Below, piece by piece: positions 14,548-32,467 of a stretch of DNA of 64,000 nucleotides. Position numbers and translations under genes: made by a program. Below the pieces are notes generated by a model. The model made no database searches. It was given only the letters and a program-made list of their open reading frames with translations, and was not told the DNA's origin. Location: IMG/VR virus record IMGVR_UViG_3300042350_004191, positions 1 to 64,000 of that record. One strand, written 5' to 3'. The first letter of the stretch is position 1. The number at the start of each line of letters is the position of its first letter.

Positions 14548-14864
14548 TTGTCAGGATATATTATCATATTCTATAGGAAAATCAAATAATAGGTGGACTA
14601 GGGGTATATTATAGGGTAGGGGGTGTATATTTTTATACAGGGGGTAGGCAATGCCCCCCCACCGACTTTTTTATGACAAACTCTATGGGTGTTTTTTTCT
14701 GGCTTGGGTCTGTTACTATGACACTCTTTCAGTGGTGGACTGTGTTGTGTCATAGTGGTTTCCGTTTCATCTGGTTTGTATCAGAGTGCCTGTCACTTCG
14801 AGGTCGAGTCTTTACAGCACCGGACAGATGACAACAGCACCGGAGGGAGCAACCGATACGGCGC

Positions 14865-14895
14865 AAAAAAAACCCTCTCCTTTTGGAGAGGGTTT
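14865..14895 (-). terminator. Rho-independent terminator
   Basis: CCCTCTCC-TTTT-GGAGAGGG hairpin with an A8 tract on + (U-tail on -). Confidence 0.85.
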
Positions 14896-14914
14896 CAGTG
14901 GGGAAGATTTCGGA

Positions 14915-15148
14915 TTAGGAAACCGGAGCCTTCTTCAGGTCATGGATGGGCGCAGCCTTTGCCTTGCCAACCTTGGGGAGGTTGGTGGCGCAGGAGCGCA
15001 GAGCAAAGCGCACCGCATCGGATTTGCTGATGCCCAAGGTGAGCATGATGGTGGACAGAGCCGCCTCTGTTTCAGCTTCCCAACGGAAGGTTCCGCCGAG
15101 GGCTTTGTTGGTTTTGTATGCGCGTTTGGTGGTGGTGATGTTTCTCAT
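14915..15148 (-). CDS. Ribbon-helix-helix (CopG/Arc/MetJ-like) DNA-binding protein, 77 aa
   Basis: Start re-called at 15148 from promoter position; GGTFRWEAETEAALSTIMLTLGISKSDAVRFALR fits the RHH pattern. Confidence 0.65.
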   Translation of the reverse strand: MRNITTTKRAYKTNKALGGTFRWEAETEAALSTIMLTLGISKSDAVRFALRSCATNLPKVGKAKAAPIHDLKKAPVS

Positions 15149-15158
15149 AACGGTGATG

Positions 15159-15187
15159 ATAGTAGTCTGGATTACTTGTAAACACAA
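15159..15187 (-). promoter_or_regulatory. Boxed early-type promoter
   Basis: TTGTGT-ttacaagtaatccagac-TACTAT; ATG 10 nt downstream. Confidence 0.75.
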
Positions 15188-15280
15188 GCACAAATGTAGG
15201 ACAATCTGGGAGGGTAAGAGAGGCAAGGGGATGACAGCACCAGCACCGGAGGAGCATCGAGGTATGGCGCATCGAGGAGA

Positions 15281-15316
15281 AAAAGAAAACCCCTGTCACC
15301 TTTCGATGACAGGGGT
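15281..15316 (-). terminator. Rho-independent terminator
   Basis: ACCCCTGTCA/TGACAGGGGT stem plus A-tract. Confidence 0.8.
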
Positions 15317-15336
15317 GGATGCCACACGCCGCTCTA

Positions 15337-15852
15337 TCAGAAACCATCGTTGTATGGTTCGTAAGGTTCGTTCAGACCTGATGCCAGCCATTCGGTGACA
15401 GTGTTCCGGTCTTCGAGGATGATGTCACTGGCGACCCAGTAGTTGAGGATATCCTCAGTGAGGGTGGAGGGGTTGTAGCCTCTCTGGTAGAACCTACCAT
15501 TGACAAAGGTGCAGAAGGCGGCGGTGCAATCGACATCCCTCTCGATGAGTTCGTACCTCTCGATGGTCTGACCGAAGGATGCACCCTTGGTGCCAGTGAA
15601 GGTGATCTTCCGAGTGTAGAAGTTGCTGTGATCATCTTCATCAAAGAAGTTCTCAGGCAGTAGGCAGCAGTCCATCTTGTGTTCCCTACAGAGGTAGCCT
15701 TCGAGTTCGGTGCAGTGAAGGTCACAGATGATTTTCGCATCGGTGATGGACGGGTATTGATCGTCCTTGGTATCCGCGATGTGCTTGGGAGCAGTCGTGG
15801 TGTTGAGGTAACGGTGTTTGATGATGTTGATGAGTTCGGTGAGTGTGTCCAT
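15337..15852 (-). CDS. Early hypothetical protein
   Basis: Start re-called at MDTLTELINII, 10 nt after the -10 box. Confidence 0.7.
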   Translation of the reverse strand: MDTLTELINIIKHRYLNTTTAPKHIADTKDDQYPSITDAKIICDLHCTELEGYLCREHKMDCCLLPENFFDEDDHSNFYTRKITFTGTKGASFGQTIERYELIERDVDCTAAFCTFVNGRFYQRGYNPSTLTEDILNYWVASDIILEDRNTVTEWLASGLNEPYEPYNDGF

Positions 15853-15862
15853 AACGTGTAAG

Positions 15863-15891
15863 AGACTACTATGGATTACTTGTAAGGTCGA
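15863..15891 (-). promoter_or_regulatory. Boxed early-type promoter
   Basis: TCGACC-ttacaagtaatccatag-TAGTCT. Confidence 0.75.
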
Positions 15892-15977
15892 GCTAAAAAT
15901 GAATTCCTTTTTAATTGCCAGCACCCTGTGTCATTGAGGCAAGGCGACACAGGGTGCTGTTGTAACTCAGTGCTGCA

Positions 15978-16190
15978 TTACAGAACAGGTAGGTCTTCGA
16001 CTTCGTTGACGGTGATGAGGTAGTGCTTCCTCGTTCCATCATTGTTGAACCATGTGGCTTGCACCACATTGTCCTTGTGCAGTCTGATGTAGGGAGTGCG
16101 ATAACCTCTCTCTCCCTCATCCAAACCCCTCACTACTTTAGTGATGACAACTTCGAGGTCTTCTAGGTCCTTGATGTCTTTAGTCTTCAT
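15978..16190 (-). CDS. Early hypothetical protein
   Basis: ORF, ATGA-coupled to the upstream ORF; hairpin at 15919-15958 follows. Confidence 0.6.
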   Translation of the reverse strand: MKTKDIKDLEDLEVVITKVVRGLDEGERGYRTPYIRLHKDNVVQATWFNNDGTRKHYLITVNEVEDLPVL

Positions 16191-16459
16191 TGATGGTATT
16201 GTCCGGTGGTCAGACGCTGGAGAGACTCAGCCCAATCGTAGTGGGGCATCCATTCTCCATCGCTGAAGTCGATGTAGTGCCTGTCATGCGACAGCTTGTA
16301 GGTGATTCCTTTTGCCTTGCATTCCTTTCGGAACTGGAGGTAGTCAGGATCTGTCTTCTTCCTCGCTGGCTTCGAGCCGTATTCGAGGAGTCGATTGAGA
16401 TTGCGCTGGAGCATCCAGAGACTCATTTGAATTCCTCCGGTATCTCGACCTTCTCCCAT
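16187..16459 (-). CDS. Early hypothetical protein (true start probably MSLWML)
   Basis: ORF in operon. Confidence 0.55.
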   Translation of the reverse strand: MGEGRDTGGIQMSLWMLQRNLNRLLEYGSKPARKKTDPDYLQFRKECKAKGITYKLSHDRHYIDFSDGEWMPHYDWAESLQRLTTGQYHQ

Positions 16460-16821
16460 TCGCCGTAGGCAATCGAGGAGCCGTAGTTATCGACAAACGG
16501 TTTGAGTCTGTCGCCAGCTTTGTAGCCTGTCATGGTGTAGCCCATGCGAGCCAGTGCTTCGAGCTTCTCGTCGGTGAGAAGGTCTGCATCGGTCTGGACG
16601 TTCATGCTCACGTTGACCTTGAAGGGGATTCTCTTTGGTGAGTAGAGAGCCTTGCCAGTGCGTTTGAGCTTTCCGTTCCTGAGAGCCTTGGCATTACGCA
16701 AAGCCTCACCGATTGTTTCGCCACAGCCCCAATTGAATTCATTGGTCTTGGCGATGTAGTAGACTGTCTGTTTACTGGACATAAACGAGTGTGCCTTGTC
16801 TGACTTCGAGTTGAGAAGCAA
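16423..16821 (-). CDS. Early hypothetical protein (true start probably MSSKQTV)
   Basis: ORF in operon. Confidence 0.6.
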   Translation of the reverse strand: MLLNSKSDKAHSFMSSKQTVYYIAKTNEFNWGCGETIGEALRNAKALRNGKLKRTGKALYSPKRIPFKVNVSMNVQTDADLLTDEKLEALARMGYTMTGYKAGDRLKPFVDNYGSSIAYGEWEKVEIPEEFK

Positions 16822-16991
16822 CCTGCTTTTATGTGGTTACAGGTTGGGCGATGAATTGACCAGCGAAAGCACCAGCAACGCCGCCACATTACCCTTTTCT
16901 TCTCGTCTGTGAAAGTCAGCTTATAGGCTATGTTCTCCTACTGATGTTTTGTGTGGTGTTCTCAGTACATCTCGTACTTTGAACGAGAACC

Positions 16992-17019
16992 ACTGTAGCA
17001 GGATTATTTGTAAACGCGA
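16992..17019 (-). promoter_or_regulatory. Boxed early-type promoter
   Basis: TCGCGT-ttacaaataatcctgc-TACAGT. Confidence 0.6.
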
Positions 17020-17276
17020 GAAAATAAAATTCAATTGGAAAGATTTTTTTCTTTACATTTGGAAATCAAACAGTCGTTTAAGTTGGAAATTAAATTGTAA
17101 GACAATTAGAATTTTCTTGACTGACAAAGAAATTTTTAGTAGTCAAAATTTTTTGAAATAGAACAAGTAATCCGAAAATGTCAAGACTAAAATGATTGTC
17201 TTACGTTGTAAGTATTTGTGCCAGCCCGAATTAGAAACAAGACGTTGATTGTAAGACAAAGAGAAAGGCTGGACAC

Positions 17277-17305
17277 AAAGAAGGACGGGAGCAATCCCGT
17301 CCTTC
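17277..17305 (-). terminator. Terminator hairpin
   Basis: GAAGGACGGGA-GCAA-TCCCGTCCTTC perfect stem. Confidence 0.75.
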
Positions 17306-17530
17306 AAGTTTTAGAATGTAAGACGATTAGTTAGGGCTGTTGAGCATCTGGAGCTTCTGGTCTTTGAGACTGACCATATTATCTGCAAGGATGTTCAGTT
17401 TCGCCTCATGCTCTCGCAAGTGCTGGAGGAGGATGGAGATTGCGGATTTGGCTAATTCCATTTCCTCTTGGAGTCTTTCGATTTGTGTCATGGTGAAAGT
17501 GGGGAGAGGGTTTCCCCTCTCCCCATGATT

Positions 17531-18106
17531 TTAGTCGTGGAGTTGGATCAGATTCCCCTTCACTTTGATGCCAGCCATTTGCTCTGGCGTGAAGATGAAT
17601 TCGCGGAACCTCTCACGCTTGAAGCCGCACACCTTTTTGATGTGTTTCTTCGCCAGCGTCAGAGGACGCGAGTTAACGGGTTTCTTTGGATTGGTCGGAG
17701 GAGCGATTTGTTCCTTCTGTTCCCGAAACCCATACAGATGAATCGTTCCGCTTTCCTTGTGGAGCTTGATTCCATCCGAGATAATCTCGTAGGTATCCTC
17801 TCCGTTGTTTTTGTTTTGAGCCGCATGAACGTAGCTCCCAGAGACACCATTGGTGAGCGTTTGCGTCAGCGAGGCGAGCAATTCCGCTTTCGCTTTGGCT
17901 TCCAGATCGTTTTGCGGTTGGTATGCTTCCAGAGCAGCTTTGTCATGCTCACAGGCAGCTTTGTTGCTGATACCAAAGTTAAGCGTGTAGCGAGCCGTCT
18001 CGCCAGTGTCTTTGGTAACGTAGAGGAAGGAGATGAACGTGCAACCCTTCTTTGTGGCTTCCTCCAGAATTTCCAGAGGACTTTGTGTGTTGGTGTTATT
18101 TCTCAT
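17531..18106 (-). CDS. Early hypothetical protein
   Basis: 191-aa ORF with its own promoter and a downstream hairpin at 17501-17524. Confidence 0.75.
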   Translation of the reverse strand: MRNNTNTQSPLEILEEATKKGCTFISFLYVTKDTGETARYTLNFGISNKAACEHDKAALEAYQPQNDLEAKAKAELLASLTQTLTNGVSGSYVHAAQNKNNGEDTYEIISDGIKLHKESGTIHLYGFREQKEQIAPPTNPKKPVNSRPLTLAKKHIKKVCGFKRERFREFIFTPEQMAGIKVKGNLIQLHD

Positions 18107-18116
18107 AACAGGAAGG

Positions 18117-18145
18117 AGTATCGCATGGATTACTTGTAAGGTCGA
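18117..18145 (-). promoter_or_regulatory. Boxed early-type promoter
   Basis: TCGACC-ttacaagtaatccatgc-GATACT-ccttcctgtt-ATG. Confidence 0.75.
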
Positions 18146-18380
18146 GAAAATAAATCCGATTGGATTAAAATTTCTGAATGTCTTACAATCAACCTATCCA
18201 CATGGAATTCGATGGGATTGGAATTGTAAGACAATTAGATTTTGATTGTCTTACGATATATAAGTCAAAAAAAATTGTAAGACAATTGAGAACCAGATCG
18301 TAAGACATTCTTCGCCACTCGGTTTTGTCCGTGGGTTTAACCCACTGTCAAGGATCACCGAAAACCTATACGATTTGATT

Positions 18381-18686
18381 TTACTTTTTCGCTTCCATCG
18401 GAAGCTTCACGCAGTTGCAGAATTCCACATCTGCGAGTGCATCTTGCTCTGTCATGCTTCCCTCATCGATCATGTCTGAGTAGATGCAGACAGCAATCTC
18501 ACGGAGAGAAGAGGCTTTCATTTCCCAACCATTCCCCCAGTTGTTTCCATTGTTGGGAAGTTCCATGTCCCTCTTCGCATGAGAGCAAGTGGAAGCATGG
18601 ACACGGAAGGCTCCGTGTCTCCAGCTTGCAGGACCACAGACTTGTACGGACAGTTCTTTCGATTTGGTGATAGTAGGTGTTCTCAT
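18381..18686 (-). CDS. Early small Cys/His-containing protein
   Basis: ORF with its own promoter; HASTCSH...FCNC. Confidence 0.65.
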   Translation of the reverse strand: MRTPTITKSKELSVQVCGPASWRHGAFRVHASTCSHAKRDMELPNNGNNWGNGWEMKASSLREIAVCIYSDMIDEGSMTEQDALADVEFCNCVKLPMEAKK

Positions 18687-18696
18687 AACAGGAAAG

Positions 18697-18725
18697 AGTG
18701 TCGCACAAATTACTTGTAAGGTCGA
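18697..18725 (-). promoter_or_regulatory. Boxed early-type promoter
   Basis: TCGACC-ttacaagtaatttgtgc-GACACT-ctttcctgtt-ATG. Confidence 0.75.
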
Positions 18726-19064
18726 GAATAAAAACCGATTGGATTTAAGTTTCCAATTGTCCTACAATCGCTGAAAATTTTTGCCCTATATATGTAAGAC
18801 AATTAGATTTTGATTGTCTTACGAATTATTGGCTGTCTGAAAACCGTTGTTACCTGACACTATGATGCAACGTAACACGATGTTGAATTGTAAGACAATT
18901 AGATTTCCGAGCAAAGAAGAACCCCAAGGATTTCTCCTTGGGGTTTTGAGCTATTTGTTTTCTTCGTTTAGCTTCGCAACCTCATCGAGCCATGCTTCGT
19001 ATTCGGAAGCAAACTCATCGCTCTGCATGATGGTATTGAAGTCATCGGTGACTGGATTCATAAG

Positions 19065-19286
19065 CTATTCACCCCAATGGGAGATCCTGCAACGCATCAG
19101 ATAGCAAGTCTCATCGTGCCAGAAGTTACAGACAAAAACGCAGTTAGGGATAGGACCAATAGCTTCACTGCTGCGATCAATGAAGAGTCCCTGTTGCCAG
19201 CATTCATTACGAATGCCCCGATCTTTCCACCGAAGCGGAATGTATTGACTCCACCAAACTGAGTCGGTTGTGGTTTTAGTGCTCAT
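19065..19286 (-). CDS. Early hypothetical Trp/Cys-rich protein
   Basis: ORF with its own promoter; terminator hairpin at ~18914-18946. Confidence 0.6.
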   Translation of the reverse strand: MSTKTTTDSVWWSQYIPLRWKDRGIRNECWQQGLFIDRSSEAIGPIPNCVFVCNFWHDETCYLMRCRISHWGE

Positions 19287-19296
19287 AACAGGAATG

Positions 19297-19325
19297 AAAC
19301 TACTACGGATTACTTGTCAGCACAA
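19297..19325 (-). promoter_or_regulatory. Boxed early-type promoter
   Basis: TTGTGC-tgacaagtaatccgtag-TAGTTT-cattcctgtt-ATG. Confidence 0.7.
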
Positions 19326-19435
19326 GAAAAAAAACCAATTGGATTCAAATACCCGATTGTAAGACAATTAGAATATTATTGACAAAAGCAAAAAACCCCC
19401 ACCTTTCGGTGAGGGTCTTTTGTGATTCTTATCCC

Positions 19436-20482
19436 TTACTTGGTAGCGAGGATTGCTTCACGCCCAAGCTGCAAGATCTCTTTGCGACGAGCATCATTCG
19501 AGAGCATCGCAACAAACGCTTGCTTATGTTCAGCAGCACTACCCATCGCAGAGCGATAGAGGCGGCTACCTTGGGAGTTAGTGCGTCCAGTGCCATTGCC
19601 ATGAGTCCAAAACTCTGTTGCACCATTGGCAAGGTCATACAGGGTTTCGCCAGTGTTCCCGATACCACGCGCAAAGAGCAACGTGATTTCGTTTGCTGCA
19701 TTCACTGCGCGAGTCGAGAGTTCGACAGTGCCAGTGGTTTTGGCAAAGTATCCCATAGCCATTGCAAGGGCTTCGTTATTGTCAACCCTGCAAGAGGAGA
19801 GATACTCCATGACTTCGACCAGATTGGCGCGACCTTTGAGGATAGCGTTAACCAAGTCTCCGAGGTTTTCCATGGCGAGCTTCGCGTTCTTGGTATGGTA
19901 AACCTTGAAGCTAACATCACCCATTGCTTCCATCGACCAACGCAAGGTGTTCATGCAGATGATTCGGATGATCGAATCATAAACATTCATTGCAATGGTG
20001 CCATCATGGGAAGTGACAAAGTTCAAGTGGGCTTTGAATTTCTCTTTTCCACGCTTGTTGACTTTGACTTCCAGATCCGACCCATTCAGTGCAACACTGA
20101 TGGCGAATTTCTTCCCACGCTCCAGCGAGCAGATCGAGGAGATTTTGGCTCCCAAATCTTTGATCGCAGCTTCGAGGGTGTTCCAAACCTCTTCGTTTGA
20201 GATAGGCGTATAGCCAGCCTTGGGAATGTGCAGAGGCACAATCTGATCTACAACGTCGAGGTCATCGCGGCATTCGCGGTGATCCGCGAGCAGCACTTTA
20301 TACTTGTCCAAGGTGATCTGGCGACCATCCAAGTAGACAAGTGCAGGGGATTCAGCGACCTTGAAGAAGTGCTTTTTGGCAACCTCTCTGTCGATCACTT
20401 GACGGTGATTCGCCATCGTATGCCACTCAGTGCCTTCGATGGAGTCTACCATATCATGCGGTAATACTATTCCATGACTCAT
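19436..20482 (-). CDS. DUF932 (phage/plasmid-like, TIGR03299-type) protein
   Basis: SLERGKKF, TSHDGT, IRIICMNTL and HTKN motifs; terminator at 19390-19418. Confidence 0.8.
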   Translation of the reverse strand: MSHGIVLPHDMVDSIEGTEWHTMANHRQVIDREVAKKHFFKVAESPALVYLDGRQITLDKYKVLLADHRECRDDLDVVDQIVPLHIPKAGYTPISNEEVWNTLEAAIKDLGAKISSICSLERGKKFAISVALNGSDLEVKVNKRGKEKFKAHLNFVTSHDGTIAMNVYDSIIRIICMNTLRWSMEAMGDVSFKVYHTKNAKLAMENLGDLVNAILKGRANLVEVMEYLSSCRVDNNEALAMAMGYFAKTTGTVELSTRAVNAANEITLLFARGIGNTGETLYDLANGATEFWTHGNGTGRTNSQGSRLYRSAMGSAAEHKQAFVAMLSNDARRKEILQLGREAILATK

Positions 20483-20548
20483 ATATTTTGTGTCTTTCTT
20501 TTGTGTTTTGGTTAGTTAGCTGAATACTTCTTGCATTCAACTGTCCCT

Positions 20549-20577
20549 ATCCTAATTGAGATTACTTGTAAGTGCAA
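20549..20577 (-). promoter_or_regulatory. Boxed early-type promoter
   Basis: TTGCAC-ttacaagtaatctcaat-TAGGAT. Confidence 0.75.
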
Positions 20578-20882
20578 GTTTTATTTTCATTCTTTTTTAA
20601 TTAAATCCAATTGTCTTACAAATCGAGGTCAGTCTGTTTGTCTTACAAAGTGTTGACAATCAACAACATCCATCCGATTGTCTTACGATCTATTCACCTG
20701 TGAAAAAGGGAGGAAGATTTCTCCTCCTCCCTTTACCACTACACCACACACAAAACTTTATGAAGGCATATCCCAACCTTCATCGTATGCTTCTTTCCAT
20801 GCACGATAGTAATTGTATGCTGCCCATCCAATCACTGACAATGCACCAACAAGCACACCGAGGATAAATGAAATGAAAATAC

Positions 20883-21203
20883 TCATTCGGAAACTTCCAA
20901 TTTGGTTGGTTCGTAGTATTGATGTTGAGGCGCATCATACCATTCTTCTGTGGAGACTTCACCTTTGACCAGATCATATGTGATGTTGTCTCCGTAGTTG
21001 CTACCATCACCAGCACCCGAATAGGAATAGACTTCCCATGCCCAGTCTTCAATCTCTTGGGCGAAGTTGTTATTTTGTTCTGGTGCTAATCCAACGTGCA
21101 AATATCCTTCGTCACTTCCACCAGAAAACTCAAGGACGATTTGTTCGACTCCAAGTTTCTTGGCTTTGTTGTAGATTTTTTTAGATAGAGGTTGTGCTTC
21201 CAT
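20883..21203 (-). CDS. DUF6878-like protein
   Basis: VLEFSGGSDEG and GAGDG..YG.I motifs. Confidence 0.6.
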   Translation of the reverse strand: MEAQPLSKKIYNKAKKLGVEQIVLEFSGGSDEGYLHVGLAPEQNNNFAQEIEDWAWEVYSYSGAGDGSNYGDNITYDLVKGEVSTEEWYDAPQHQYYEPTKLEVSE

Positions 21204-21204
21204 G

Positions 21205-21588
21205 TTATTTGATTTCTAATTTGGTTGTTTGGGTTTTCTTGCCGACAGTCATCATCCACTTTGGAGGATTGTTAGTCAGCATGAAAAGGTAATCCTTTGG
21301 AGTCGGAATGAATCCGCAGTCTTCTTGGATATGTTGCTCCGCGAGCATCTTGGTAGGAATCTCCTGTCCATTGCTATTAGTGATAGCATGACCAAACTCT
21401 TTGATTGCCCATTGGATACCAGCAGAATGATGACGCAGTGCGCGATGAGTCCAATCTCCTGTGAAGGCTTTTGTTTCATCGAACCAGTCATGGAGTTCGA
21501 CGTAATCCATCGGATCGCCACCCCATTTAGAGGCTGATGATTGTGCGTGTTTGTAAGGTGTCATAGGATTTCGATTAGTTGTTTCCAA
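21205..21588 (-). CDS. DUF6915-like protein
   Basis: PYKHAQSSASKWGG, HDWFDETK, HRALRHH and EQHIQEDCG motifs. Confidence 0.7.
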   Translation of the reverse strand: METTNRNPMTPYKHAQSSASKWGGDPMDYVELHDWFDETKAFTGDWTHRALRHHSAGIQWAIKEFGHAITNSNGQEIPTKMLAEQHIQEDCGFIPTPKDYLFMLTNNPPKWMMTVGKKTQTTKLEIK

Positions 21589-21720
21589 GACCTTCTCGCA
21601 TTTTGAAATGATCTTCCATGTATCTTAATGCTTTTTCTTCATCAAAATTATAAGTCTCCATGACATACTGGACAGCCTCTTCAAAAGTCAATTCAGTATC
21701 GGGGTTGTTCCATTCTTTTT

Positions 21721-22305
21721 TCATTTGCTGTAAGACTTCCAGATTTCCAAATCCATGTCAGCAATATTCTTTCCTGCTTTTTCGCATTCGGAAATAAAAT
21801 CCAATTCAATTTTCCGATACTTCTTCTTGTTGGAAGGAGTTGCTTTCGGGACATTGTATCCCTTCTCTGACATATACTTGAGGATGTGTGTATCCAAGAC
21901 AGCAACCTTCATGTCTGGACGAGAGTGCAGGACAAAGAACCGAGATGTCTTGGGTCCGATTCCCTCTACGGATTCCAGTTCTTGGCAACTGACAGTATGA
22001 AGTCTTCCTTCAAACTGGAGAATGCCACGGAAAGCTTTTTCAATCCGATTGTATTGTCCGAGCTTGTAGTGCTTCAAACGTCCCACCAAGGTTCCAGAGT
22101 CAACCATAGCATCGTTATAGTTGACGAGGTAGCGCAACCATTTGAAAGGAGAAACCCCAATGACTCTGGATGTCCACAAAAACTGATTGAGTTTTTCTGC
22201 CTGTGTCTTTGCCGTCTTACCAGCAACGAGGATGGCAAACATGAGAAACTCTTCGAGTTCTTCTTGGGTTCGATTGTAGTTAGTGATGTCTGTTGGTGTT
22301 ATCAT
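21721..22305 (-). CDS. HhH DNA glycosylase, Ogg-like
   Basis: VEGIGPKTSRFF HhH; AVLDTHILK; DLEIW C-terminus. Confidence 0.75.
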   Translation of the reverse strand: MITPTDITNYNRTQEELEEFLMFAILVAGKTAKTQAEKLNQFLWTSRVIGVSPFKWLRYLVNYNDAMVDSGTLVGRLKHYKLGQYNRIEKAFRGILQFEGRLHTVSCQELESVEGIGPKTSRFFVLHSRPDMKVAVLDTHILKYMSEKGYNVPKATPSNKKKYRKIELDFISECEKAGKNIADMDLEIWKSYSK

Positions 22306-22315
22306 GGTGGTAGTG

Positions 22316-22343
22316 GTTGTATCAGATTAGTTGTAAAGGTCAA
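22316..22343 (-). promoter_or_regulatory. Boxed early-type promoter
   Basis: TTGACC-tttacaactaatctga-TACAAC. Confidence 0.6.
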
Positions 22344-22351
22344 GATTTATT

Positions 22352-22546
22352 TCAAACACAGTATGCTTCGAGTGCATCGAGTTTTTTGGCACAGATGAGA
22401 ACAAGCATTGCTTGAGTAATCTTTACTCCACACTTTGCTGTGTAACTCATAGGGATGTTGGGAAACTCTGGAGTGGAAACAGTCTCTCCGTCGAATACCA
22501 CAGGGAAAGCATCTCCTGCAATGTTTATCCAAATTGTTTTTTTCAT
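22352..22546 (-). CDS. Hypothetical protein
   Basis: ORF in operon. Confidence 0.5.
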   Translation of the reverse strand: MKKTIWINIAGDAFPVVFDGETVSTPEFPNIPMSYTAKCGVKITQAMLVLICAKKLDALEAYCV

Positions 22547-22774
22547 TTAGATTTTCTCCTTCACACGGATGAGTTCGTCTGCTGTGCGATAGGTGACTTT
22601 GGTGAGTTGCAACAAAGGTGCTTGGTCAACCTCGCCACCAGAAAGAATCTTCGTGATGCGATAGTCAACGCCATTGCTGATGACAGTATCACCCAATTCC
22701 AATTCGTTTCCTTCTTGGTCAAGGACAAATGGTTTACAATCTTCGTCGGATAGGTAGTAGTTGGTTTTTTTCAT
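22547..22774 (-). CDS. Hypothetical protein
   Basis: ORF in operon. Confidence 0.55.
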   Translation of the reverse strand: MKKTNYYLSDEDCKPFVLDQEGNELELGDTVISNGVDYRITKILSGGEVDQAPLLQLTKVTYRTADELIRVKEKI

Positions 22775-23010
22775 GGAAGGTCTTTATAGAATTTTAGAAC
22801 GCCTCGGTCAATAAGATTTTGCACTTCTCCACATTCAATCTTTCCACGCTCACCATCGGAATCAATGAACCACACGTTCCCATTTGGTGCTTCACTGGAC
22901 AGAAGAAGAACAGAGCCTTCTCTATGGTTTTTGTAAATCTGTGGATTGGGGTTATGAACATTGCTGTCGTATCCCAATTGAATTGGTTTTTGGACGATAT
23001 AGGATTTCAT
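22771..23010 (-). CDS. Hypothetical protein (start re-called at MKSYIVQ)
   Basis: The longer ORF call overlaps tRNA-Cys. Confidence 0.55.
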   Translation of the reverse strand: MKSYIVQKPIQLGYDSNVHNPNPQIYKNHREGSVLLLSSEAPNGNVWFIDSDGERGKIECGEVQNLIDRGVLKFYKDLP

Positions 23011-23027
23011 TTGGTTTTTAGTGGTTA

Positions 23028-23099
23028 AGCATCGTGTTGGATTTGAACCAACGTATAAGAGTTTTGCAGACTCTCGCCTTACCACTTGGCTAACGATGC
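23028..23099 (-). tRNA. tRNA-Cys(GCA)
   Basis: GCATCGT/ACGATGC acceptor stem, U73, anticodon arm AGAGT-CTGCAAA-ACTCT. Confidence 0.92.
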
Positions 23100-23114
23100 G
23101 TCAATGTGGCGAGC

Positions 23115-23143
23115 ATCATGCCCAAAATTACTTGTAAGGTCAA
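23115..23143 (-). promoter_or_regulatory. Boxed early-type promoter (drives tRNA-Cys)
   Basis: TTGACC-ttacaagtaattttggg-CATGAT. Confidence 0.75.
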
Positions 23144-23441
23144 ATCTTTTTTTAGGGGTCTGAGAGAATTCTCTGATTGTAAGACAATTAGATTTTCCTT
23201 GACTAAGAATTTATTTCTGATATTATCTATAACCTTTTGATTGTAAGACAATTAGATCTGATTGTCTTACATGTCGGCGTTCAACGACATTCAGGAATGT
23301 TGCCTAATGCCGACATCGGTATCACAAATTGTGATTTCAAAAACGTTTGCAAACAGACATGTATTATGTGTCTGTCTGCAAACAAAACAAAGAGGGTCGA
23401 GCCTTTCGACCCGACCCTCTTACCACTACTACCACCAAAAA

Positions 23442-23690
23442 CTATTTAGATTCTTTTTGTTTAGCTCTCAGCTTTTTTAATTTGTCCCAGAGTTTAGCAT
23501 GTTCAACATTAAAGCTCTGATATTCTTCATACAGTCCCTTATCGAGGAAGCATGAAATATTATCTCCTAAATCATCAACAAACTCCAAATCATCTACAAG
23601 AGTCAAAGCAACGTCATGAAGGTCAGACCAAACTTCTTCGAGCCTGTTTAACAATTCTTGTTCTTTCTTTTCAAATGTATTCTTTTTCAT
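23442..23690 (-). CDS. Hypothetical helical protein
   Basis: ORF; terminator hairpin at 23390-23421 follows. Confidence 0.55.
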   Translation of the reverse strand: MKKNTFEKKEQELLNRLEEVWSDLHDVALTLVDDLEFVDDLGDNISCFLDKGLYEEYQSFNVEHAKLWDKLKKLRAKQKESK

Positions 23691-23694
23691 GGTG

Positions 23695-23946
23695 TTAGCT
23701 ATTCAGCCAGTTGATGAACCTCATAGTAAAATGAGCAATGATATATATTTCAGCGATCACTGATAGTAAGACAATCAGATAAAAGCCCCTAACAATCCAG
23801 ATGTCTTTGTTCGAGTTAATCATATCTTGTATTATTTTTTTCCTTTCTTCTTGGATGTATTCTGATTCAAAACTGTATTTGGAAAGAGGCTCATTGTCCT
23901 CTCGCGTATGCGCGTGTGTGCGCTGTATTGAATCAGGGTGTTCCAT
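23695..23946 (-). CDS. Membrane protein (C-terminal TM)
   Basis: Hydrophobic C-terminal helix. Confidence 0.55.
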   Translation of the reverse strand: MEHPDSIQRTHAHTREDNEPLSKYSFESEYIQEERKKIIQDMINSNKDIWIVRGFYLIVLLSVIAEIYIIAHFTMRFINWLNS

Positions 23947-23963
23947 TTTAGCACAGTGTTGTA

Positions 23964-24125
23964 TTAATACCAGTAGTAGGCTCGAACACGATTTTGTTCA
24001 GGGTGTTTGGCGAGATTCGGTGTCTTAAAGACAGCCATTGCTTCTCGTTGCACCTGTCGTTCCCACCTACTGACAGATGAGCAACCAGCAGTTCCTAATA
24101 GTAAGACAATTAGAATAGTTTTCAT
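23964..24125 (-). CDS. Small lipoprotein (53 aa, not in ORF track)
   Basis: MKTILIVLLLGTAGCSSVSRW...; lipobox TAGC; overlaps the stop of the upstream gene. Confidence 0.65.
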   Translation of the reverse strand: MKTILIVLLLGTAGCSSVSRWERQVQREAMAVFKTPNLAKHPEQNRVRAYYWY

Positions 24126-24601
24126 TAGGCTGCAATTTTCAAATCAGTAGGAACCTTGGCAGTCTTTCCTGTAAAGGTTTCGTAATACTCTACTGCATGT
24201 TGCCATTCAGTATCTTCCATTGTTCCATCAGAAGAGAAGTCGAATACTTCTTTGGGGAAGATGTGTGCAAAGGTTAGCAGTGCAAAACATACGAGAAGAT
24301 CGTAGGGTTTACGGGCTGTCTTGCAGAAGTCGCTCCAGTTGCCAAGCAAGTTAGGGCGCGACCAGTGCATACCAAAGGTTTCGTGATCGAGTCCTTCAGC
24401 TTGATTTCCATTGAACCAGACTTCGGTTTCGTTGAAGATAGGATCACCTTCTCCGAGTCCTCCTCGAATCTCGATACCCTTGTTAGGCAACCATTCAGCA
24501 AACTTCTTAATCTGCTGACTGGCTTTCTTGAACTTCTTGCGAAGCTGTTCAGTATTTTGAACCTTATTAGGCTCAAACTTCCAGTAGTGTGTGTATCCCA
24601 T
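24125..24601 (-). CDS. Conserved phage hypothetical protein (start re-called at MGYTHYW)
   Basis: MGYTHYW, FNG...HETF and FCKTARKPYD motifs. Confidence 0.75.
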   Translation of the reverse strand: MGYTHYWKFEPNKVQNTEQLRKKFKKASQQIKKFAEWLPNKGIEIRGGLGEGDPIFNETEVWFNGNQAEGLDHETFGMHWSRPNLLGNWSDFCKTARKPYDLLVCFALLTFAHIFPKEVFDFSSDGTMEDTEWQHAVEYYETFTGKTAKVPTDLKIAA

Positions 24602-24602
24602 A

Positions 24603-24911
24603 TTATTGTTCTCCGTTGAAATGGTATTCGTATTCCGCTGCCTCGACAAGCAGGTTGATGATACCAACGCCAAACTTGTCTTGGGGGTCGCTATCCATTT
24701 CATGGTAATGATCGGCAGCGATGCCATAGTTTCCGTTTTTGATTTCATGGCAAACAAACAAGGAGTCTGCGAAATCGTCTGATGCCATCTTGAGAAGCTC
24801 CAGATCGCTATTACGAGCATAGCGTTCCATGAGTTTGAGGTAGTATGGCTTGAACCGCTTGATGTGGTTGTCTGCCATTTTGTTTAGCTTTGCTTTTGGT
24901 AGTTTTTTCAT
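24603..24911 (-). CDS. Early hypothetical protein
   Basis: Promoter at 24921-24949, TTGACC-ttacagataaaaaccac-TAATCT. Confidence 0.65.
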   Translation of the reverse strand: MKKLPKAKLNKMADNHIKRFKPYYLKLMERYARNSDLELLKMASDDFADSLFVCHEIKNGNYGIAADHYHEMDSDPQDKFGVGIINLLVEAAEYEYHFNGEQ

Positions 24912-24945
24912 AACGCGAGCAGATTAGTGGTTTTTATCTGTAAGG

Positions 24946-25146
24946 TCAAGATTTTTCTGCAAGGTCGATAAGTTGTTGGTGATCAATCCATTTGCCATCA
25001 ACAGTCTTTTGGAACTTGGTGATGATCTTCTGGAATTGTTCATTGGTCAATCCCAAATCTTCCTCGATCCAATCATCCCAATTGGAATTAAGATAACACA
25101 GTGCATAGTCGATGACTCGATCCATTGCTTGTTTATTCTTTTTCAT
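24946..25146 (-). CDS. Hypothetical protein
   Basis: ORF in operon. Confidence 0.5.
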   Translation of the reverse strand: MKKNKQAMDRVIDYALCYLNSNWDDWIEEDLGLTNEQFQKIITKFQKTVDGKWIDHQQLIDLAEKS

Positions 25147-25401
25147 ACTAATTCAATCTGATCTTCGCCACGGAAGATCGTTTGCGGTTGGAGAGGAGCA
25201 AGTTCAAAGATAGGAGTAGGTTCTCCATCATTTCCTTGAGACTCTTGATGAATCTTGTAGATACGATAGAGTTCTTTTTTGCGACCAACTCTCACAATAT
25301 CACCTTCTTTAACCATGTCACCATGCTTGTCACCTGCAATGATTGAGCCTTTGAGTTGGGCATGAACCTCTTCGTAGGTATTAGTAGTTGTATGCATCAT
25401 A

Positions 25402-25611
25402 TTATCTGTCCTCCGCGATCCACCACCCAAGTTGCGCCAAGGCAGCATGAGCAGCATGGTTAACATCAACGGCATCAACCTCAAACAAATCACTTGGATT
25501 GAAATCGTTGACAATCAGAAAAGACTTTTTCTTCCGACGAATCTCACGCTTCACTCTTTCTGTTGGTAAAGAGCGTAGCTTGTTTGTTAGGATTCTTTTT
25601 ACTGTTTTCAT
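25402..25611 (-). CDS. Hypothetical protein
   Basis: ORF in operon. Confidence 0.5.
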   Translation of the reverse strand: MKTVKRILTNKLRSLPTERVKREIRRKKKSFLIVNDFNPSDLFEVDAVDVNHAAHAALAQLGWWIAEDR

Positions 25612-25947
25612 TTAGCAACTCCTGCAAACTGTTGAGGTCACACCAGCAAGTTCGTTTTCCCATTCGGTTGCTGGCTTCAAGAGAGTAAGCTGAACCCTGT
25701 CTCCCTCGTTATCTATGAGGAGCATCAGACAACCATCATCGCTTACAGAAACAATTGAATTGTTTTCTTCCACGAATTTGACATTGTAAGACAGTCCATC
25801 TTCTTCCCAAGAAAGATAAAGGAATTCGTTTTCTTTATCTCCTGTGATTTCATCAAGACTTGGATAGATCAGAGCATTGTTCTCGACAATGACAGCAGCG
25901 CATTCACGAAGTCTGTTGAAGGCTTGTTTAAGTGGTATCTTCTTCAT
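25612..25947 (-). CDS. Early hypothetical protein
   Basis: Promoter at 25957-25985, TTGCCA-tttacaaacaaaaccac-TAACCT. Confidence 0.65.
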   Translation of the reverse strand: MKKIPLKQAFNRLRECAAVIVENNALIYPSLDEITGDKENEFLYLSWEEDGLSYNVKFVEENNSIVSVSDDGCLMLLIDNEGDRVQLTLLKPATEWENELAGVTSTVCRSC

Positions 25948-26017
25948 GTTGGTCAGAGGTTAGTGGTTTTGTTTGTAAATGGCAAGCATTTTTTCTAAAC
26001 CACTGATTGTAAGACAA

Positions 26018-26218
26018 TTATTCTTCCTCAGAGAATTCCAGAAGAGATTCGATATGCTCGAAAGATTCTTTGATCTTCATATTTCCATATGAGATGATCT
26101 TGGATTCGAGTTCGTAATGCTCATCCATTGAATAGCCAGCAAGAAACAGGTGAAGCGCACTGGCAGCTTCTTTGGTTTTCTTGTCGCCATACTTTTTAAT
26201 GAATTGTGTTTTAGTCAT
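26018..26218 (-). CDS. Hypothetical protein
   Basis: ORF. Confidence 0.5.
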   Translation of the reverse strand: MTKTQFIKKYGDKKTKEAASALHLFLAGYSMDEHYELESKIISYGNMKIKESFEHIESLLEFSEEE

Positions 26219-26222
26219 TTTG

Positions 26223-26468
26223 TTATTCGTTTGTATAGAGTCTAGGTGTTACCGCTGTTTTGACAAAACCGTTATACAGTTTAGGTGTAACTTCTGTTTT
26301 GACATGTTTCCATTCAGCGCGATTGCAGTGATGCTCTATCCACCGCTGCAAAAGATTTTGTGCTTTGCAAATGGCAATACGAACCTCATCAAGATCATTT
26401 GTATTACCAGTGATCTCCTTTCGGAGTTGTCCCAAGCATTCTTCGATTTCGATATGTGTCAGTGTCAT
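26223..26468 (-). CDS. Hypothetical protein
   Basis: ORF. Confidence 0.5.
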   Translation of the reverse strand: MTLTHIEIEECLGQLRKEITGNTNDLDEVRIAICKAQNLLQRWIEHHCNRAEWKHVKTEVTPKLYNGFVKTAVTPRLYTNE

Positions 26469-26525
26469 AAAGTATTTGGTGGTTTGGGGTGGGAGAGAAT
26501 ATCCCTCCCACCCCTACCACTACTA

Positions 26526-27464
26526 CTACCAATTCTTCTTCACGAATTTTCCGTTGCTATCACGAACAGCGTAGTATTTCTGTCCGGTAGGTTTCTGTCC
26601 ATAGACACCACGCTCTCCATTAGAGAAGTCGTATTCGTCTTGCATCTCGTCCTCGTAGCTATCGTCATAGTCATCCTCATACTCTCCACCATTGGAGGAG
26701 TAGAGTGGAGCGTCCCATCCCGACTCGTCACGCTGAACCTTAGAACGCCAATCGTCCTTGTATTCAGCAACGACCTCGTAGCGACAGCACCGACCCTTGG
26801 TGTTGTTGTAATCAGCAGGGATGCTGACAACATCCTTGGGATTGATCTTGACGATGACAGTCTTTCCGTTCTCACCATCCGAGAAATTCGGAAGGTATTT
26901 GATGGAACAGAAGTGCAGACCTTGCGAGCAAGTCTGATCCTTGTCCTCACACACACGATTGCGAGGCATCTCACAGATAGAACCAACTTGATTGTTGAAG
27001 GTTCCAGAGTGAATGTCTGTCCAATCGCCACGGATATTCTTGAAGGCAAGGAAGCAACCATCTTCTGTGATGGGAAGCTCACCAGCCTCAAGGAAATCAT
27101 ACAACTCATCCACAGCACGTTTGCTTGGATTCTGCATGAGGTTGGCGAGGAATTTCACCATCGGTTGAAACGGCAAGTCATCGCGCATGAACGCGAGGAT
27201 GCGGTTGGTCAGTGTGTTGTGGATGATTTCACCATTGAAGGTGATAGCACCATCAGCAATCGCCACACCATCAGAGATGTATTGACTGACTTGGTTTCCA
27301 ATGTCCACAAGGTCAACGAAGCTCTCCCAATCGCCCATGCGAATAGCATCCAAGATGCCGTTGTATTTGGGATGATCAGTCTCGACCATATAGGACTTGC
27401 CATCTATCACAGCAGCGATCTTGCCGCTACCAGTGATTGTAACTGCGTTTGTGGTTGTAGCCAT
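26526..27464 (-). CDS. rIIB: RIIB-like protein
   Basis: NPS..AVDELYDFL, ITEDGCFLAFK, EMPRNRV..D...CSQGLH and VVSIPADY..KGRCCRY motifs; adjacent to rIIA. Confidence 0.9.
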   Translation of the reverse strand: MATTTNAVTITGSGKIAAVIDGKSYMVETDHPKYNGILDAIRMGDWESFVDLVDIGNQVSQYISDGVAIADGAITFNGEIIHNTLTNRILAFMRDDLPFQPMVKFLANLMQNPSKRAVDELYDFLEAGELPITEDGCFLAFKNIRGDWTDIHSGTFNNQVGSICEMPRNRVCEDKDQTCSQGLHFCSIKYLPNFSDGENGKTVIVKINPKDVVSIPADYNNTKGRCCRYEVVAEYKDDWRSKVQRDESGWDAPLYSSNGGEYEDDYDDSYEDEMQDEYDFSNGERGVYGQKPTGQKYYAVRDSNGKFVKKNW

Positions 27465-27501
27465 ATTTTCTATTTGGTTTTAGTGTTGTTGTTTCAGTTG
27501 G

Positions 27502-29499: not shown

Positions 29500-29554
29500 G
29501 GTAGTAGTTTGTTTGTGGTTAGTTGTTGTAGTTGTATTTCATTTAACGTGGAGA

Positions 29555-29583
29555 AGTATGCCAGCGATTACTTGTAATGTCGA
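29555..29583 (-). promoter_or_regulatory. Boxed early-type promoter for rIIA-rIIB
   Basis: TCGACA-ttacaagtaatcgctgg-CATACT. Confidence 0.75.
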
Positions 29584-29673
29584 GAAATAATTTCGAGAAA
29601 GTTTTTGTTGGTGAGATAGTAATTCCTTGTAAAGTCAAGCTTTTTGTGATTGTCTTACAATCGGTGTTACGAA

Positions 29674-29708
29674 GAAAAAGAGCAGGGACTTTTGATCCCT
29701 GCTCTTTC
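29674..29708 (-). terminator. Terminator (possibly bidirectional)
   Basis: AAAGAGCAGGGA-CTTTTGA-TCCCTGCTCTTT. Confidence 0.8.
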
Positions 29709-30446: not shown

Positions 30447-30491
30447 AGTATTGGTATGATATGATTTTTAATGTGGAATGTCAATTCTTTT

Positions 30492-30998: not shown

Positions 30999-31170
30999 GG
31001 TAGTATTTCTATTTGGTTTTTAATCTTCGAGTTCTTTCATGTTATCGACTACGATTTGACAAGCCATATCTTTGACTTCATCCAAGTATTCGACAAGACC
31101 GAATTGTGATTCGAGCATACAAATCAGGTCTTCCTGAATTTGTTCGCTGACTCTTGCTATTTGTTTTTTC

Positions 31171-31726: not shown

Positions 31727-31739
31727 TTGGTTTAATTGT

Positions 31740-32458: not shown

Positions 32459-32467
32459 TGGAAATTG

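What the first reader, a model, noticed from the sequence alone, without database searches (positions are those of the whole stretch)
14750..20760. Array of self-contained expression cassettes separated by repeat-rich spacers
Seen: seven consecutive units of [boxed promoter, 1-3 small genes, usually a GC hairpin terminator], separated by non-coding spacers up to ~300 bp that carry the TTGTAAGACAAT boxes. Gene density is unusually low for a phage. Known: in T4-type phages, repeated promoter/stem-loop (PeSL) cassettes mediate shuffling of early genes by recombination. Inference: the shared promoter and box sequences form a plug-in platform for gaining, losing and reordering host-takeover or anti-defence genes, integron-like but without an integrase in this window.
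Basis: inference. Interest (0 to 1): 0.65.

Follow-up and report, generated by a model that had tools for sequence, protein, structure and literature searches.

The report
Swappable early-gene cassettes in a lake phage
A freshwater T4-like phage carries a row of small self-contained early genes, each with the same promoter module, which related strains swap, lose or replace at those modules; the short repeated boxes between them look like binding sites for a phage regulator.

Summary
On the minus strand, 14750-20760 holds seven units. Each has a conserved promoter module, 1-3 genes (all without a known family except one DUF932 gene) and usually a GC hairpin. They are separated by non-coding spacers that carry 18 boxes, and the stretch is 66% coding.

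The window is the start of a 210.6-kb lake phage with a T4-type capsid gene, and no cultured phage is close. The array is the far end of a roughly 19-kb GC-rich early block that also holds rIIA and rIIB.

Contigs of related strains from other samples carry different cassette sets between the same flanking genes, always behind the same promoter module. Many junctions lie at the promoter core, the box next to the promoter or a hairpin. A 15-nt patch over the -10 region has been exchanged between modules. This matches the PeSL shuffling known from T4-type phages. It is not integron-like: the genome has no integrase, resolvase or Y1 transposase.

Three features differ from described PeSLs:
- The start codon sits 10 nt after the -10 element, so the mRNAs are probably almost leaderless.
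- The boxes are dense, differ between lineages and share an invariant GTAAGA centre.
- A ribbon-helix-helix gene always ends the array, and its subfamily tracks the box type.

The boxes are most likely operators. This was not tested.

The parts
20610..20688 (.). three boxes upstream of promoter A; the terminator of the upstream operon lies at 20709-20727
20483..20578 (-). promoter module A (-35-like element, core 20561-20571, -10 TAGGAT) with a long leader that opens with a 6-codon mini-ORF at 20516-20536
19436..20482 (-). gene A, 348 aa, DUF932
   Evidence: (E 1.4e-26)
19389..19422 (-). intrinsic terminator after A
19287..19368 (-). promoter module B: proximal box 19357-19368, palindrome AATCCAATTGG 19335-19345, T-tract, -35-like element, core 19309-19319, -10 TAGTTT, ATG 10 nt later
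   Evidence: (family D7)
18951..19286 (-). genes B1 (73 aa) and B2 (36 aa), no family match; terminator at 18920-18945
18792..18899 (.). spacer boxes upstream of C, including an inverted box pair at 18792-18824
   Evidence: D6
18687..18767 (-). promoter module C (core 18709-18719, -10 GACACT). The 15-nt patch over the -10 element is replaced in strain variants while both flanks stay identical.
   Evidence: (cluster of changes at 18694-18708)
18381..18686 (-). gene C, 101 aa, no family match; only a weak hairpin downstream
18224..18309 (.). spacer boxes upstream of D, including an inverted pair at 18224-18256 (hairpin z -7.3)
18107..18188 (-). promoter module D (proximal box 18177-18188, palindrome 18156-18166, core 18129-18139, -10 GATACT). 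Identity to strain L145/L166 breaks exactly at the end of the core (window 18128).
17327..18106 (-). genes D1 (191 aa) and D2 (54 aa) with a GC hairpin at 17499-17526 between them. D1 is present but diverged in all variants.
17095..17327 (.). spacer with four boxes and the D2 terminator (17280-17305). A plus-strand module (box, 8 nt, TTGACT, 17 nt, TAGTCA) lies at 17096-17145. A strain junction lies at 17221.
   Evidence: (D8)
16783..17020 (-). promoter module E (core 17003-17013) with a leader of about 220 nt
15978..16782 (-). genes E1, E2 and E3 (119, 79 and 70 aa), found only in the reference strain; hairpin at 15919-15959
15853..15892 (-). promoter module F (core 15875-15885, -10 TAGTCT, ATG 10 nt later); no box
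15337..15852 (-). gene F, 171 aa, no family match; terminator at 15289-15316
15149..15207 (-). promoter module G with a degenerate box (15194-15205) abutting the -35-like element. A strain junction lies at 15207-15212.
14915..15148 (-). gene G, 77 aa, predicted ribbon-helix-helix DNA-binding protein; last gene of the early block; terminator at 14873-14890
20760..33700 (-). rest of the same early block: further promoter cores at 22326, 23127, 27586, 29567, 29622, 32342 and 33424, boxes up to 33678, rIIB (26526-27464), rIIA (27502-29499) and five tRNA genes

Best explanation
The stretch is the far end of the early-gene hyperplastic region of an uncultured freshwater T4-superfamily phage. Each unit is an autonomous early transcription unit built on a conserved module of about 85-90 bp. 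The module reads, in order: a proximal box; a CCAATNGG palindrome; a T-tract; a -35-like hexamer (TCGACC, TTGTGC or similar); the conserved spacer core TTACAAGTAATCC; a -10 hexamer of the form xAxxxT; and an ATG exactly 10 nt later with no Shine-Dalgarno sequence. The mRNA therefore probably starts 1-3 nt before its start codon (inferred). One to three genes and a hairpin terminator follow.

The nearly identical modules give every cassette the same timing. They also serve as homology for the phage's own recombination system, so genes behind a module are exchanged, lost or gained. This is shown by strain comparison and works the way PeSLs do.

The 15-nt boxes are most likely operators for a phage-encoded dimeric regulator. 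The best candidate is the ribbon-helix-helix protein G, encoded by the last cassette. It would autoregulate its own gene and shut off or insulate the early units as it accumulates (inferred).
For: Phage identity:
- gp23 capsid gene, E 1.6e-91
- rIIA, portal and fibre genes; rIIB
- RecA/UvsX-like gene

Promoter module:
- Repeat families D3-D10, 64-90 nt long.
- 26 aligned modules from four genomes share the architecture; most, including every module in the finding except E, have A at position 2 and T at position 6 of the -10 hexamer and a fixed distance to the ATG.
- The close spacing of -10 and ATG is also seen in three other lineages.

Cassette turnover between A and G:
- reference: B, C, D, E, F
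- L166 type: B, C, D', X
- L171 type: D', X
- L176: nine modules, mostly with other genes

Junctions:
- Identity ends exactly at the end of the core, at window 18128.
- E+F is replaced by X between window 17221 and 15212.
- The B+C indel runs from the CCAATT palindrome to the proximal box.
- In L176, homology tracts stop at 19283 (the ATG), 18709 and 17003 (both cores) and restart at 18285 and 15207 (both boxes).
- A 15-nt patch over the -10 element differs between two strains whose C protein is 100% identical, and the same patch sits in front of an unrelated gene in L176.

Boxes:
- All are non-coding. The proximal copy sits 37-39 nt from the core in A-D.
- L156 has 81 copies in 13 kb against about 4 expected.

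RHH candidate:
- The model has a beta-alpha-alpha core with pLDDT 85-94.
- The top fold matches are CopG, ParD, NikR and TCP domains.
- The homodimer test scored 0.44 against a best control of 0.00. That mark was reached by 20 of 30 solved homodimers and 1 of 23 solved single chains. The runs agree in at least 86% of contacts, and partner pLDDT is at least 61.
- An RHH gene is the last early gene in six lineages.
- RHH subfamily and box arms match in seven loci.
Against: Promoter and transcription:
- No transcription start is measured, no RNA run holds the sequence and the host is unknown.
- A scan with the E. coli consensus does not pick up these promoters.
- A second possible -10 element (TATTTT or TATTCT) lies upstream in some modules.

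Recombination at the modules:
- Two of the five structural differences between the reference and the 96-99% identical strain L166 lie inside operons, away from any module (the g49 indel and the g106/g42 replacement).
- The neighbouring low-GC region has no modules yet also varies between strains. Modules are therefore not needed for gene turnover.
- Spacers are the only places where junctions can survive, so enrichment at repeats is partly forced. A crude count of alignment ends found only 15 of 50 within 15 nt of a module or box.

RHH and boxes:
- The link is a correlation confounded by shared descent.
- Fold matches are weak (E about 1, Z up to 3.9).
- L153 has its own boxes, but no RHH gene was found in its 21-kb locus.
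Confidence: 0.68

Rival explanations
1. The repeats are purely regulatory. Cassette turnover comes from ordinary illegitimate recombination followed by selection, and junctions sit at modules only because these fill the non-coding space.
For: - Gene turnover also occurs in the adjacent low-GC region, which has no modules.
- Two of the five differences from L166 lie away from modules.
- The junction at 17221 lies 14 nt from a box, not inside one.
Against: - Identity breaks to the base at the end of the core.
- Three L176 homology tracts end at a core or at the ATG.
- A 15-nt patch bounded by the conserved core and the conserved GTTATG was exchanged between modules that sit in front of unrelated genes. 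This is the signature of homologous exchange.
Confidence: 0.2
2. The array is an integron-like platform in which a site-specific recombinase captures cassettes at the boxes.
For: Only the look of the array: short cassettes separated by palindromic repeats.
Against: - No Phage_integrase, Resolvase or Y1_Tnp match in the 99%-complete genome, with positive controls working.
- Every cassette has its own promoter.
- Boxes number from 0 to 5 per spacer and occur in both orientations.
- The sharpest junctions are at the promoter core, not at boxes.
Confidence: 0.03
3. The boxes bind a host factor, or are selfish elements like REP sequences or replication iterons, and have no link to protein G.
For: - They are palindromic, lie outside genes, occur in both orientations and sometimes form inverted pairs that fold as hairpins.
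- L153 has boxes but no RHH gene was found.
- The asymmetric GTAAGA centre is the same in all lineages. A conserved host partner could explain that.
Against: - The arms of the box differ between closely related phage lineages and change in concert over dozens of copies.
- The proximal copy keeps a fixed distance to the promoter.
- A degenerate copy abuts the promoter of the RHH gene itself in two RHH subfamilies.
- No Y1 transposase is present.
- The boxes are spread over at least 12 spacers, not clustered like an origin of replication.
Confidence: 0.2
4. The GC-rich block is an assembly chimera, so the array does not belong to this phage.
For: GC jumps from about 31% to 42-51% at 14.7 kb.
Against: - Independent assemblies from other samples span the boundary at 100% identity (L144, L146 and L149).
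- Relatives show the same GC contrast.
- The promoter core also occurs at 38200 and 45127, in low-GC DNA.
Confidence: 0.01

Closest known systems
PeSL (promoter-early stem-loop) cassettes of T4-type phages (Arbiol et al. 2010, PMC2839356; Comeau et al. 2014, PMC4122927)
   Same: - A repeated regulatory module of about 100 bp, concentrated in a hyperplastic region.
- It combines a sigma-70-like early promoter, an AT-rich upstream tract and a stem-loop terminator.
- It sits in front of genes of unknown function.
- Insertions, deletions and replacements between close relatives are flanked by it.
   Different: - No Shine-Dalgarno sequence; the ATG lies 10 nt after the -10 element.
- The most conserved part is the spacer between -35 and -10.
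- The terminator is 50-300 nt away from the promoter rather than interleaved with it.
- The gap is filled with lineage-specific boxes.
- An RHH gene closes the array.
- The capsid protein of this phage is only about 34% identical to that of any cultured T4-like phage.
- Mini-circles were not tested.
Host-takeover module of Bacillus phage SPO1 and the early regions of T4 and T5 (from my own knowledge, not checked here)
   Same: Many short early operons in a row, each with its own strong promoter and terminator, encoding small proteins of mostly unknown function.
   Different: No dense palindromic box arrays and no near-leaderless design are known there. There is no sequence relationship.
Arrays of short repeats bound by ribbon-helix-helix repressors, such as omega of pSM19035, Arc/Mnt of P22, CopG and MetJ (from my own knowledge)
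   Same: A small dimeric beta-alpha-alpha protein and multiple short sites, in direct and inverted orientation, upstream of several promoters. Autoregulation is typical.
   Different: Here the sites are 15 nt long with an invariant asymmetric centre, they serve many unrelated cassettes, and binding is untested.
Integrons
   Same: An array of small, exchangeable gene cassettes.
   Different: This array has no integrase and no attC or attI sites. Its cassettes carry their own promoters and terminators.
REP/BIME extragenic palindromes
   Same: Short palindromes outside genes, sometimes as inverted pairs.
   Different: No RAYT (Y1) transposase is present. The boxes keep a fixed register to the promoters and are confined to one 17-kb block.

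Membership tests
PeSL-type regulatory cassette | repeated motif of roughly 100 bp concentrated in a hyperplastic region | tested here: met
   Repeat families of 64-90 nt. All good copies lie at 15-45 kb of the 210-kb genome, on one strand.
PeSL-type regulatory cassette | sigma-70-like early promoter with an AT-rich tract upstream of -35 | tested here: inconclusive
   -35-like and xAxxxT hexamers lie 17 bp apart and a T-tract lies upstream. The E. coli consensus scan misses them. There are no TSS data and the host is unknown.
PeSL-type regulatory cassette | stem-loop terminator or attenuator as part of the motif | tested here: inconclusive
   Strong hairpins follow six of the seven units, but they lie 50-300 nt upstream of the next promoter, not within it.
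PeSL-type regulatory cassette | Shine-Dalgarno sequence and start codon at the 3' end of the motif | tested here: not met
   The start codon is part of the module, but there is no Shine-Dalgarno sequence. The ATG lies 10 nt after the -10 element.
PeSL-type regulatory cassette | indels and replacements between close relatives are flanked by the motif | tested here: met
PeSL-type regulatory cassette | excised mini-circles with a hybrid motif | not testable with these tools
   Only contigs were available. The 'goes back' joints are alignments of repeated modules, not circle junctions.
Integron | tyrosine recombinase (IntI) next to the array | tested here: not met
   No PF00589 match in the whole genome; the controls were positive.
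Integron | promoterless cassettes ending in attC sites | tested here: not met
   Every cassette has its own promoter module. The boxes vary from 0 to 5 per spacer.
Ribbon-helix-helix (Arc/MetJ/CopG) DNA-binding proteins, for protein G | beta-alpha-alpha fold forming an intertwined dimer | tested here: inconclusive
   - The model has the expected order of elements with core pLDDT 85-94.
- The best fold matches are RHH proteins, but with E about 1 and Z up to 3.9.
- The dimer test scored 0.44 against a best control of 0.00, with an interface at residues 17-31 and 45-57.
- No Pfam or PDB sequence match.
Ribbon-helix-helix (Arc/MetJ/CopG) DNA-binding proteins, for protein G | sequence-specific binding to repeated operator sites | not testable with these tools
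   Only correlation: the RHH subfamily matches the box arms in seven loci.
T4-superfamily myovirus | gp23-type major capsid protein, rIIA/rIIB, UvsX-like recombinase | tested here: met

The most novel reading that the evidence does not exclude
This uncultured phage group may run a dedicated control system for its early-gene 'nursery'. In this reading, a ribbon-helix-helix regulator encoded by the last cassette binds dozens of co-evolving 15-nt boxes between the cassettes and acts as a timer or insulator. Promoter modules fused to a near-leaderless start codon would make any captured open reading frame expressible without a ribosome-binding site. Together these would form a purpose-built platform for gene capture and testing, a kind not described for T4-type phages.
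Probability: 0.3. Interest if true: 0.72.

Novelty: new variant of a known kind. Interest (0 to 1): 0.55.

Why it matters
PeSL-mediated shuffling has been documented in a few cultured T4-type phage pairs. Here the same logic appears in a deeply divergent, uncultured freshwater lineage, and natural strain variants catch exchanges at base resolution.

The added features suggest how such a region is kept under common control while its content turns over:
- start codons that are almost leaderless;
- box arrays that change in concert within each lineage;
- a conserved RHH gene at the end of the array.

The array also offers a compact, testable pair of regulator and operator, and a set of small early genes to screen for host-takeover or anti-defence activity.

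Tried and rejected
- No DNA match in cultured phages.
- The DUF932 protein found no relative in IMG/VR.
- Scans of IMG/VR for the promoter pattern and for the 15-nt box gave only single chance hits.
- The one IMG/VR relative found through rIIA (L142, 57% identity) lacks both motifs and ends too early to be useful.
- Exact look-ups of reference proteins returned only the same strain. Variants were reached through protein G and its relatives instead.
- Pfam, PHROGs and the ESM Atlas gave nothing for 10 of the 11 cassette proteins.
- The Pfam and PDB sequence searches for G were blank.
- The joints labelled 'goes back 971/1179' and 'skips 2915' looked like circle or deletion junctions. They are short alignments (sides of 20-33 nt) of the repeated promoter module in variant contigs, for example L168, so I rejected them as evidence for circles.
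- An automatic count of alignment ends near repeats (15 of 50) is dominated by divergence inside genes and is not a usable statistic.
- A profile search for the RHH in other records was not possible, because those records are not held.
- Literature searches for the motif and for leaderless T4-like early genes found nothing relevant.
- A papers search on DUF932 gave no functional lead.

Full report
**What the window is.** The window is the first 64 kb of a 210,586-bp virus record that is rated 99% complete. Near-identical sequence is held by lake and freshwater metagenome runs from 21 studies. The genome encodes the following T4-type genes:
- a gp23-type major capsid protein, E 1.6e-91
- a portal protein, collagen-like fibres and rIIA, and rIIB
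- a RecA/UvsX-like recombinase

The capsid protein and rIIA are only about 34% identical to those of any cultured phage, and no cultured phage matches at the DNA level. It is therefore a deep, uncultured branch of the T4 superfamily. Background GC is about 31%, but the stretch from 14.7 to about 33 kb has 42-51% GC.

**The observation.** All genes in 14750-20760 are on the minus strand. There are seven units, A to G, with the coordinates given under 'parts'. Each begins with the core TTACAAGTAAT or a one-mismatch copy. The window has 26 matches with up to one mismatch against 3.7 expected by chance. Across the whole genome, the copies with a promoter-like context lie only at 15-45 kb and only on the minus strand.

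The box occurs 42 times with up to two mismatches against 14.3 expected. All 18 copies inside the finding are non-coding, and 31 of the 40 GTAAGAC cores in the genome lie between 17.0 and 33.7 kb. The full element is 15 nt long, AATTGT-AAG-ACAATT, with 6-bp palindromic arms.

Coding density is 66%. Strong hairpins follow six units, and the one after C is weak. Only A has a known family, DUF932. The other ten proteins have no significant match in Pfam or PHROGs, and the two tried in the ESM Atlas gave nothing either.

**Anatomy of the promoter module.** I aligned 26 modules from the reference and three variant genomes. They share these elements, in order:
1. a proximal box, in either orientation, 37-39 nt upstream of the core in cassettes A-D
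2. a palindrome, AATCCAATYGG
3. a T-tract
4. a -35-like hexamer (TCGACC, TTGTGC or TTGCAC)
5. the 13-nt core TTACAAGTAATCC
6. a hexamer, 17 bp after the -35-like element, that has A at position 2 and T at position 6 in most modules, including every one in the finding except E (TAGTAT, TAGTCT, GATACT, CACACT and others)
7. ten further nucleotides, often ending in GTT, followed by the ATG

No Shine-Dalgarno sequence is present. With a usual start 7 nt after the -10 element, the leader would be 1-3 nt long. This start site is an inference and was not measured.

Some modules (A, and D1 in the variants) have a long leader. In these, a conserved 6-codon mini-ORF encoding MQE[AV][LF]S takes the place of the gene's start codon.

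Three other lineages use different hexamers but keep the -10 element 6-10 nt from the ATG. The scan with the E. coli consensus does not report these promoters, so whether the host RNA polymerase recognises them remains unproven.

**Do relatives differ in cassette content?** Yes. Contigs laid on the stretch showed that strains in two other lakes lack E and F and carry a different D1.

Look-ups of exact proteins, and of relatives of protein G, fetched variant contigs from JGI, ENA and Logan assemblies. Between the same flanking genes A and G the maps are as follows:

| Strain type | Cassettes between A and G |
|---|---|
| Reference | B, C, D1-D2, E1-E3, F |
| L145/L166/L167/L168 | B, C, D1'-D2, and a new 121-aa gene X |
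| L170 to L174 | D1'-D2, X (no B, no C) |
| L176/L177 | seven cassettes, most of them unrelated genes (nine modules in the contig, counting those of A and G) |

Every cassette in every variant starts with the same module.

More distant relatives were found through the DUF932 protein. In them, whole blocks sit in another order, for example g109-g82b-g168 lies on the other side of rIIA-rIIB in L153. Almost none of B to G is present.

**Where are the junctions?** Against the 96-99% identical strain L145/L166:
- Identity is 100% up to the last base of the D core (window 18128) and then collapses. The sequence that follows resembles the leader of cassette A.
- E+F is replaced by X between window 17221, which is 14 nt from a box, and 15212, the first base of the box plus promoter of G.

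The B+C indel between L166 and L171 runs from the CCAATT palindrome of module B to the proximal box of module D.

Against L176, homology tracts end at 19283 (the ATG of B1), 18709 and 17003 (the ends of two cores), and restart at 18285 and 15207 (both boxes).

The sharpest case is module C. The reference and L166 encode identical C proteins and have identical flanks, but a 15-nt patch over the -10 element differs at most positions. The L166 version of the patch is the one that stands in front of an unrelated gene in L176. This is a conversion tract bounded by the conserved core on one side and the conserved GTTATG on the other. It shows exchange between modules.

**Caveats on the junction evidence.**
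- Two of the five differences between the reference and L166 lie inside operons, away from any module: the indel of a 49-aa gene and the g106/g42 replacement.
- A third difference is a 204-nt insertion between the promoter at 23127 and tRNA-Cys.
- The low-GC region just beyond G has no modules yet also varies between strains.
- Junctions can only survive in spacers, and the spacers consist largely of repeats.
- My automatic count of alignment ends (15 of 50 near a repeat) is dominated by divergence within genes and should not be used.

The modules are clearly used as crossover points. They are neither necessary for gene turnover nor its only source.

**No support for an integron-like mechanism.** The whole genome has no tyrosine recombinase, serine recombinase or Y1 transposase, and the positive controls worked. 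It does have a RecA/UvsX-like gene. Each cassette carries its own promoter. The known system that fits is PeSL shuffling. Its defining features, taken from PMC2839356, are mostly met. The exceptions are the Shine-Dalgarno sequence (absent), the position of the stem-loop (separate from the promoter) and the mini-circles (not testable here).

**The boxes.** They are not needed for the PeSL analogy, and they are the less ordinary part of the finding. Related lineages carry box families with the same GTAAGA centre but different arms:

| Lineage | Box |
|---|---|
| This phage and its strains | ATTGTAAGACAAT |
| L156 and L184 | AATGTAAGACAA (81 copies in 13 kb against about 4 expected) |
| L154, L181 and L186 | AAAGGTAAGACCTTT, again a 6-bp-arm palindrome |
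| L153 | GGTAGTAAGATAAA |

Dozens of copies have thus changed in concert within each lineage. That points to a lineage-specific factor acting in trans.

The last early gene, G, is predicted to fold as strand-helix-helix with pLDDT 85-94 in the core. Its best structural matches are ribbon-helix-helix proteins (CopG, ParD, NikR, TCP domains), though weakly, with E about 1 and Z up to 3.9.

A homodimer test scored 0.44 against a best control of 0.00. That mark was reached by 20 of 30 solved homodimers and 1 of 23 solved single chains. The runs agree in at least 86% of contacts, and partner pLDDT is at least 61. The interface covers residues 17-31 and 45-57, as expected for an RHH dimer.

A profile search found 31 relatives in three subfamilies, which differ in the putative DNA-reading strand: GGTFRW, TTFKHD and TFRL[PS]. 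From the subfamily I predicted the box type for contigs fetched afterwards (L181, L184, L186). The prediction held in all of them, giving seven loci in three classes with no exception.

In six lineages this gene is the last one before the switch to low-GC genes on the other strand. In two subfamilies a degenerate box abuts the -35 element of the RHH gene's own promoter.

All of this is correlation and is confounded by shared descent. L153 has boxes but no RHH gene in the 21 kb that are held. I put the claim that G binds the boxes at a little under even odds.

**Verdict.** This is a real array, and it is a PeSL-like variant in a new phage lineage. Natural variants support module-mediated cassette exchange. 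It also carries a plausible but untested layer of regulator and operator.

Noticed in passing
window 683-1144 (-): A phage-encoded tmRNA (Rfam 143 bits; tag peptide ADEEMLLAA). tmRNAs are reported in marine pelagimyophage and Melnitz-like phages (PMC9004378).
   Followed up: partly
window 23028-23099 (-) and 32368-32722 (-): tRNA genes sit inside the GC-rich early block. tRNA-Cys lies directly behind the promoter core at 23127. A cluster of Ile(tat), Met, Arg(tct) and Leu(taa) lies further on, and three of these read A-ending codons. This suggests that early genes use host-like codons while the phage supplies tRNAs for its AT-rich later genes.
   Followed up: no
window 14700-33000, compared with the rest: The early block has 42-51% GC against about 31% elsewhere. 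The same contrast is seen in relatives L153 and L142, so it is a stable trait of the group and not a chimera. The cause is unexplained.
   Followed up: partly
window 20516-20536 (-); also L166 and L171 (D1') and L176 (A): A conserved 6-codon mini-ORF (MQE[AV][LF]S) starts exactly where other modules have the gene's ATG. About 50-60 nt of leader follow before the main gene.
   Followed up: partly
window 17096-17145, 23178-23230, 33474-33526 and 33530-33582 (+): Plus-strand modules of the form box, 8 nt, TTGACT/TTGACA, 17 nt, then a -10-like hexamer (TAGnnA in three of the four) point against the early genes. The first could give an RNA of about 155 nt that ends at the bidirectional D2 terminator.
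   Followed up: no
window 33400-34150: A large AT-rich non-coding region with several boxes and other repeats lies at the upstream edge of the early block.
   Followed up: no
window 12000-14600 and the matching parts of L167 and L170: The low-GC region next to gene G also differs in gene content between strains (genes of 166+222 aa against 299 aa or 347 aa; inserts of 181 or 218 aa), although it has no promoter modules.
   Followed up: partly
window about 9597-9809 (-): A 70-aa gene has a ribosomal protein S21 Pfam hit, weak in the reference and unmarked in L170.
   Followed up: no
window 14560-14720: The boundary between the low-GC region and the early block carries G-runs and 'tatat' repeats. 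A similar sequence follows the RHH gene in L154 (4530-4580).
   Followed up: no
window 21205-21564 and 21721-22305 (-): A DUF6915 protein (E 1e-39) and an Ogg-like helix-hairpin-helix DNA glycosylase domain (E 1e-6) lie in the operon just upstream of the array. DUF6915 is conserved in all relatives.
   Followed up: no
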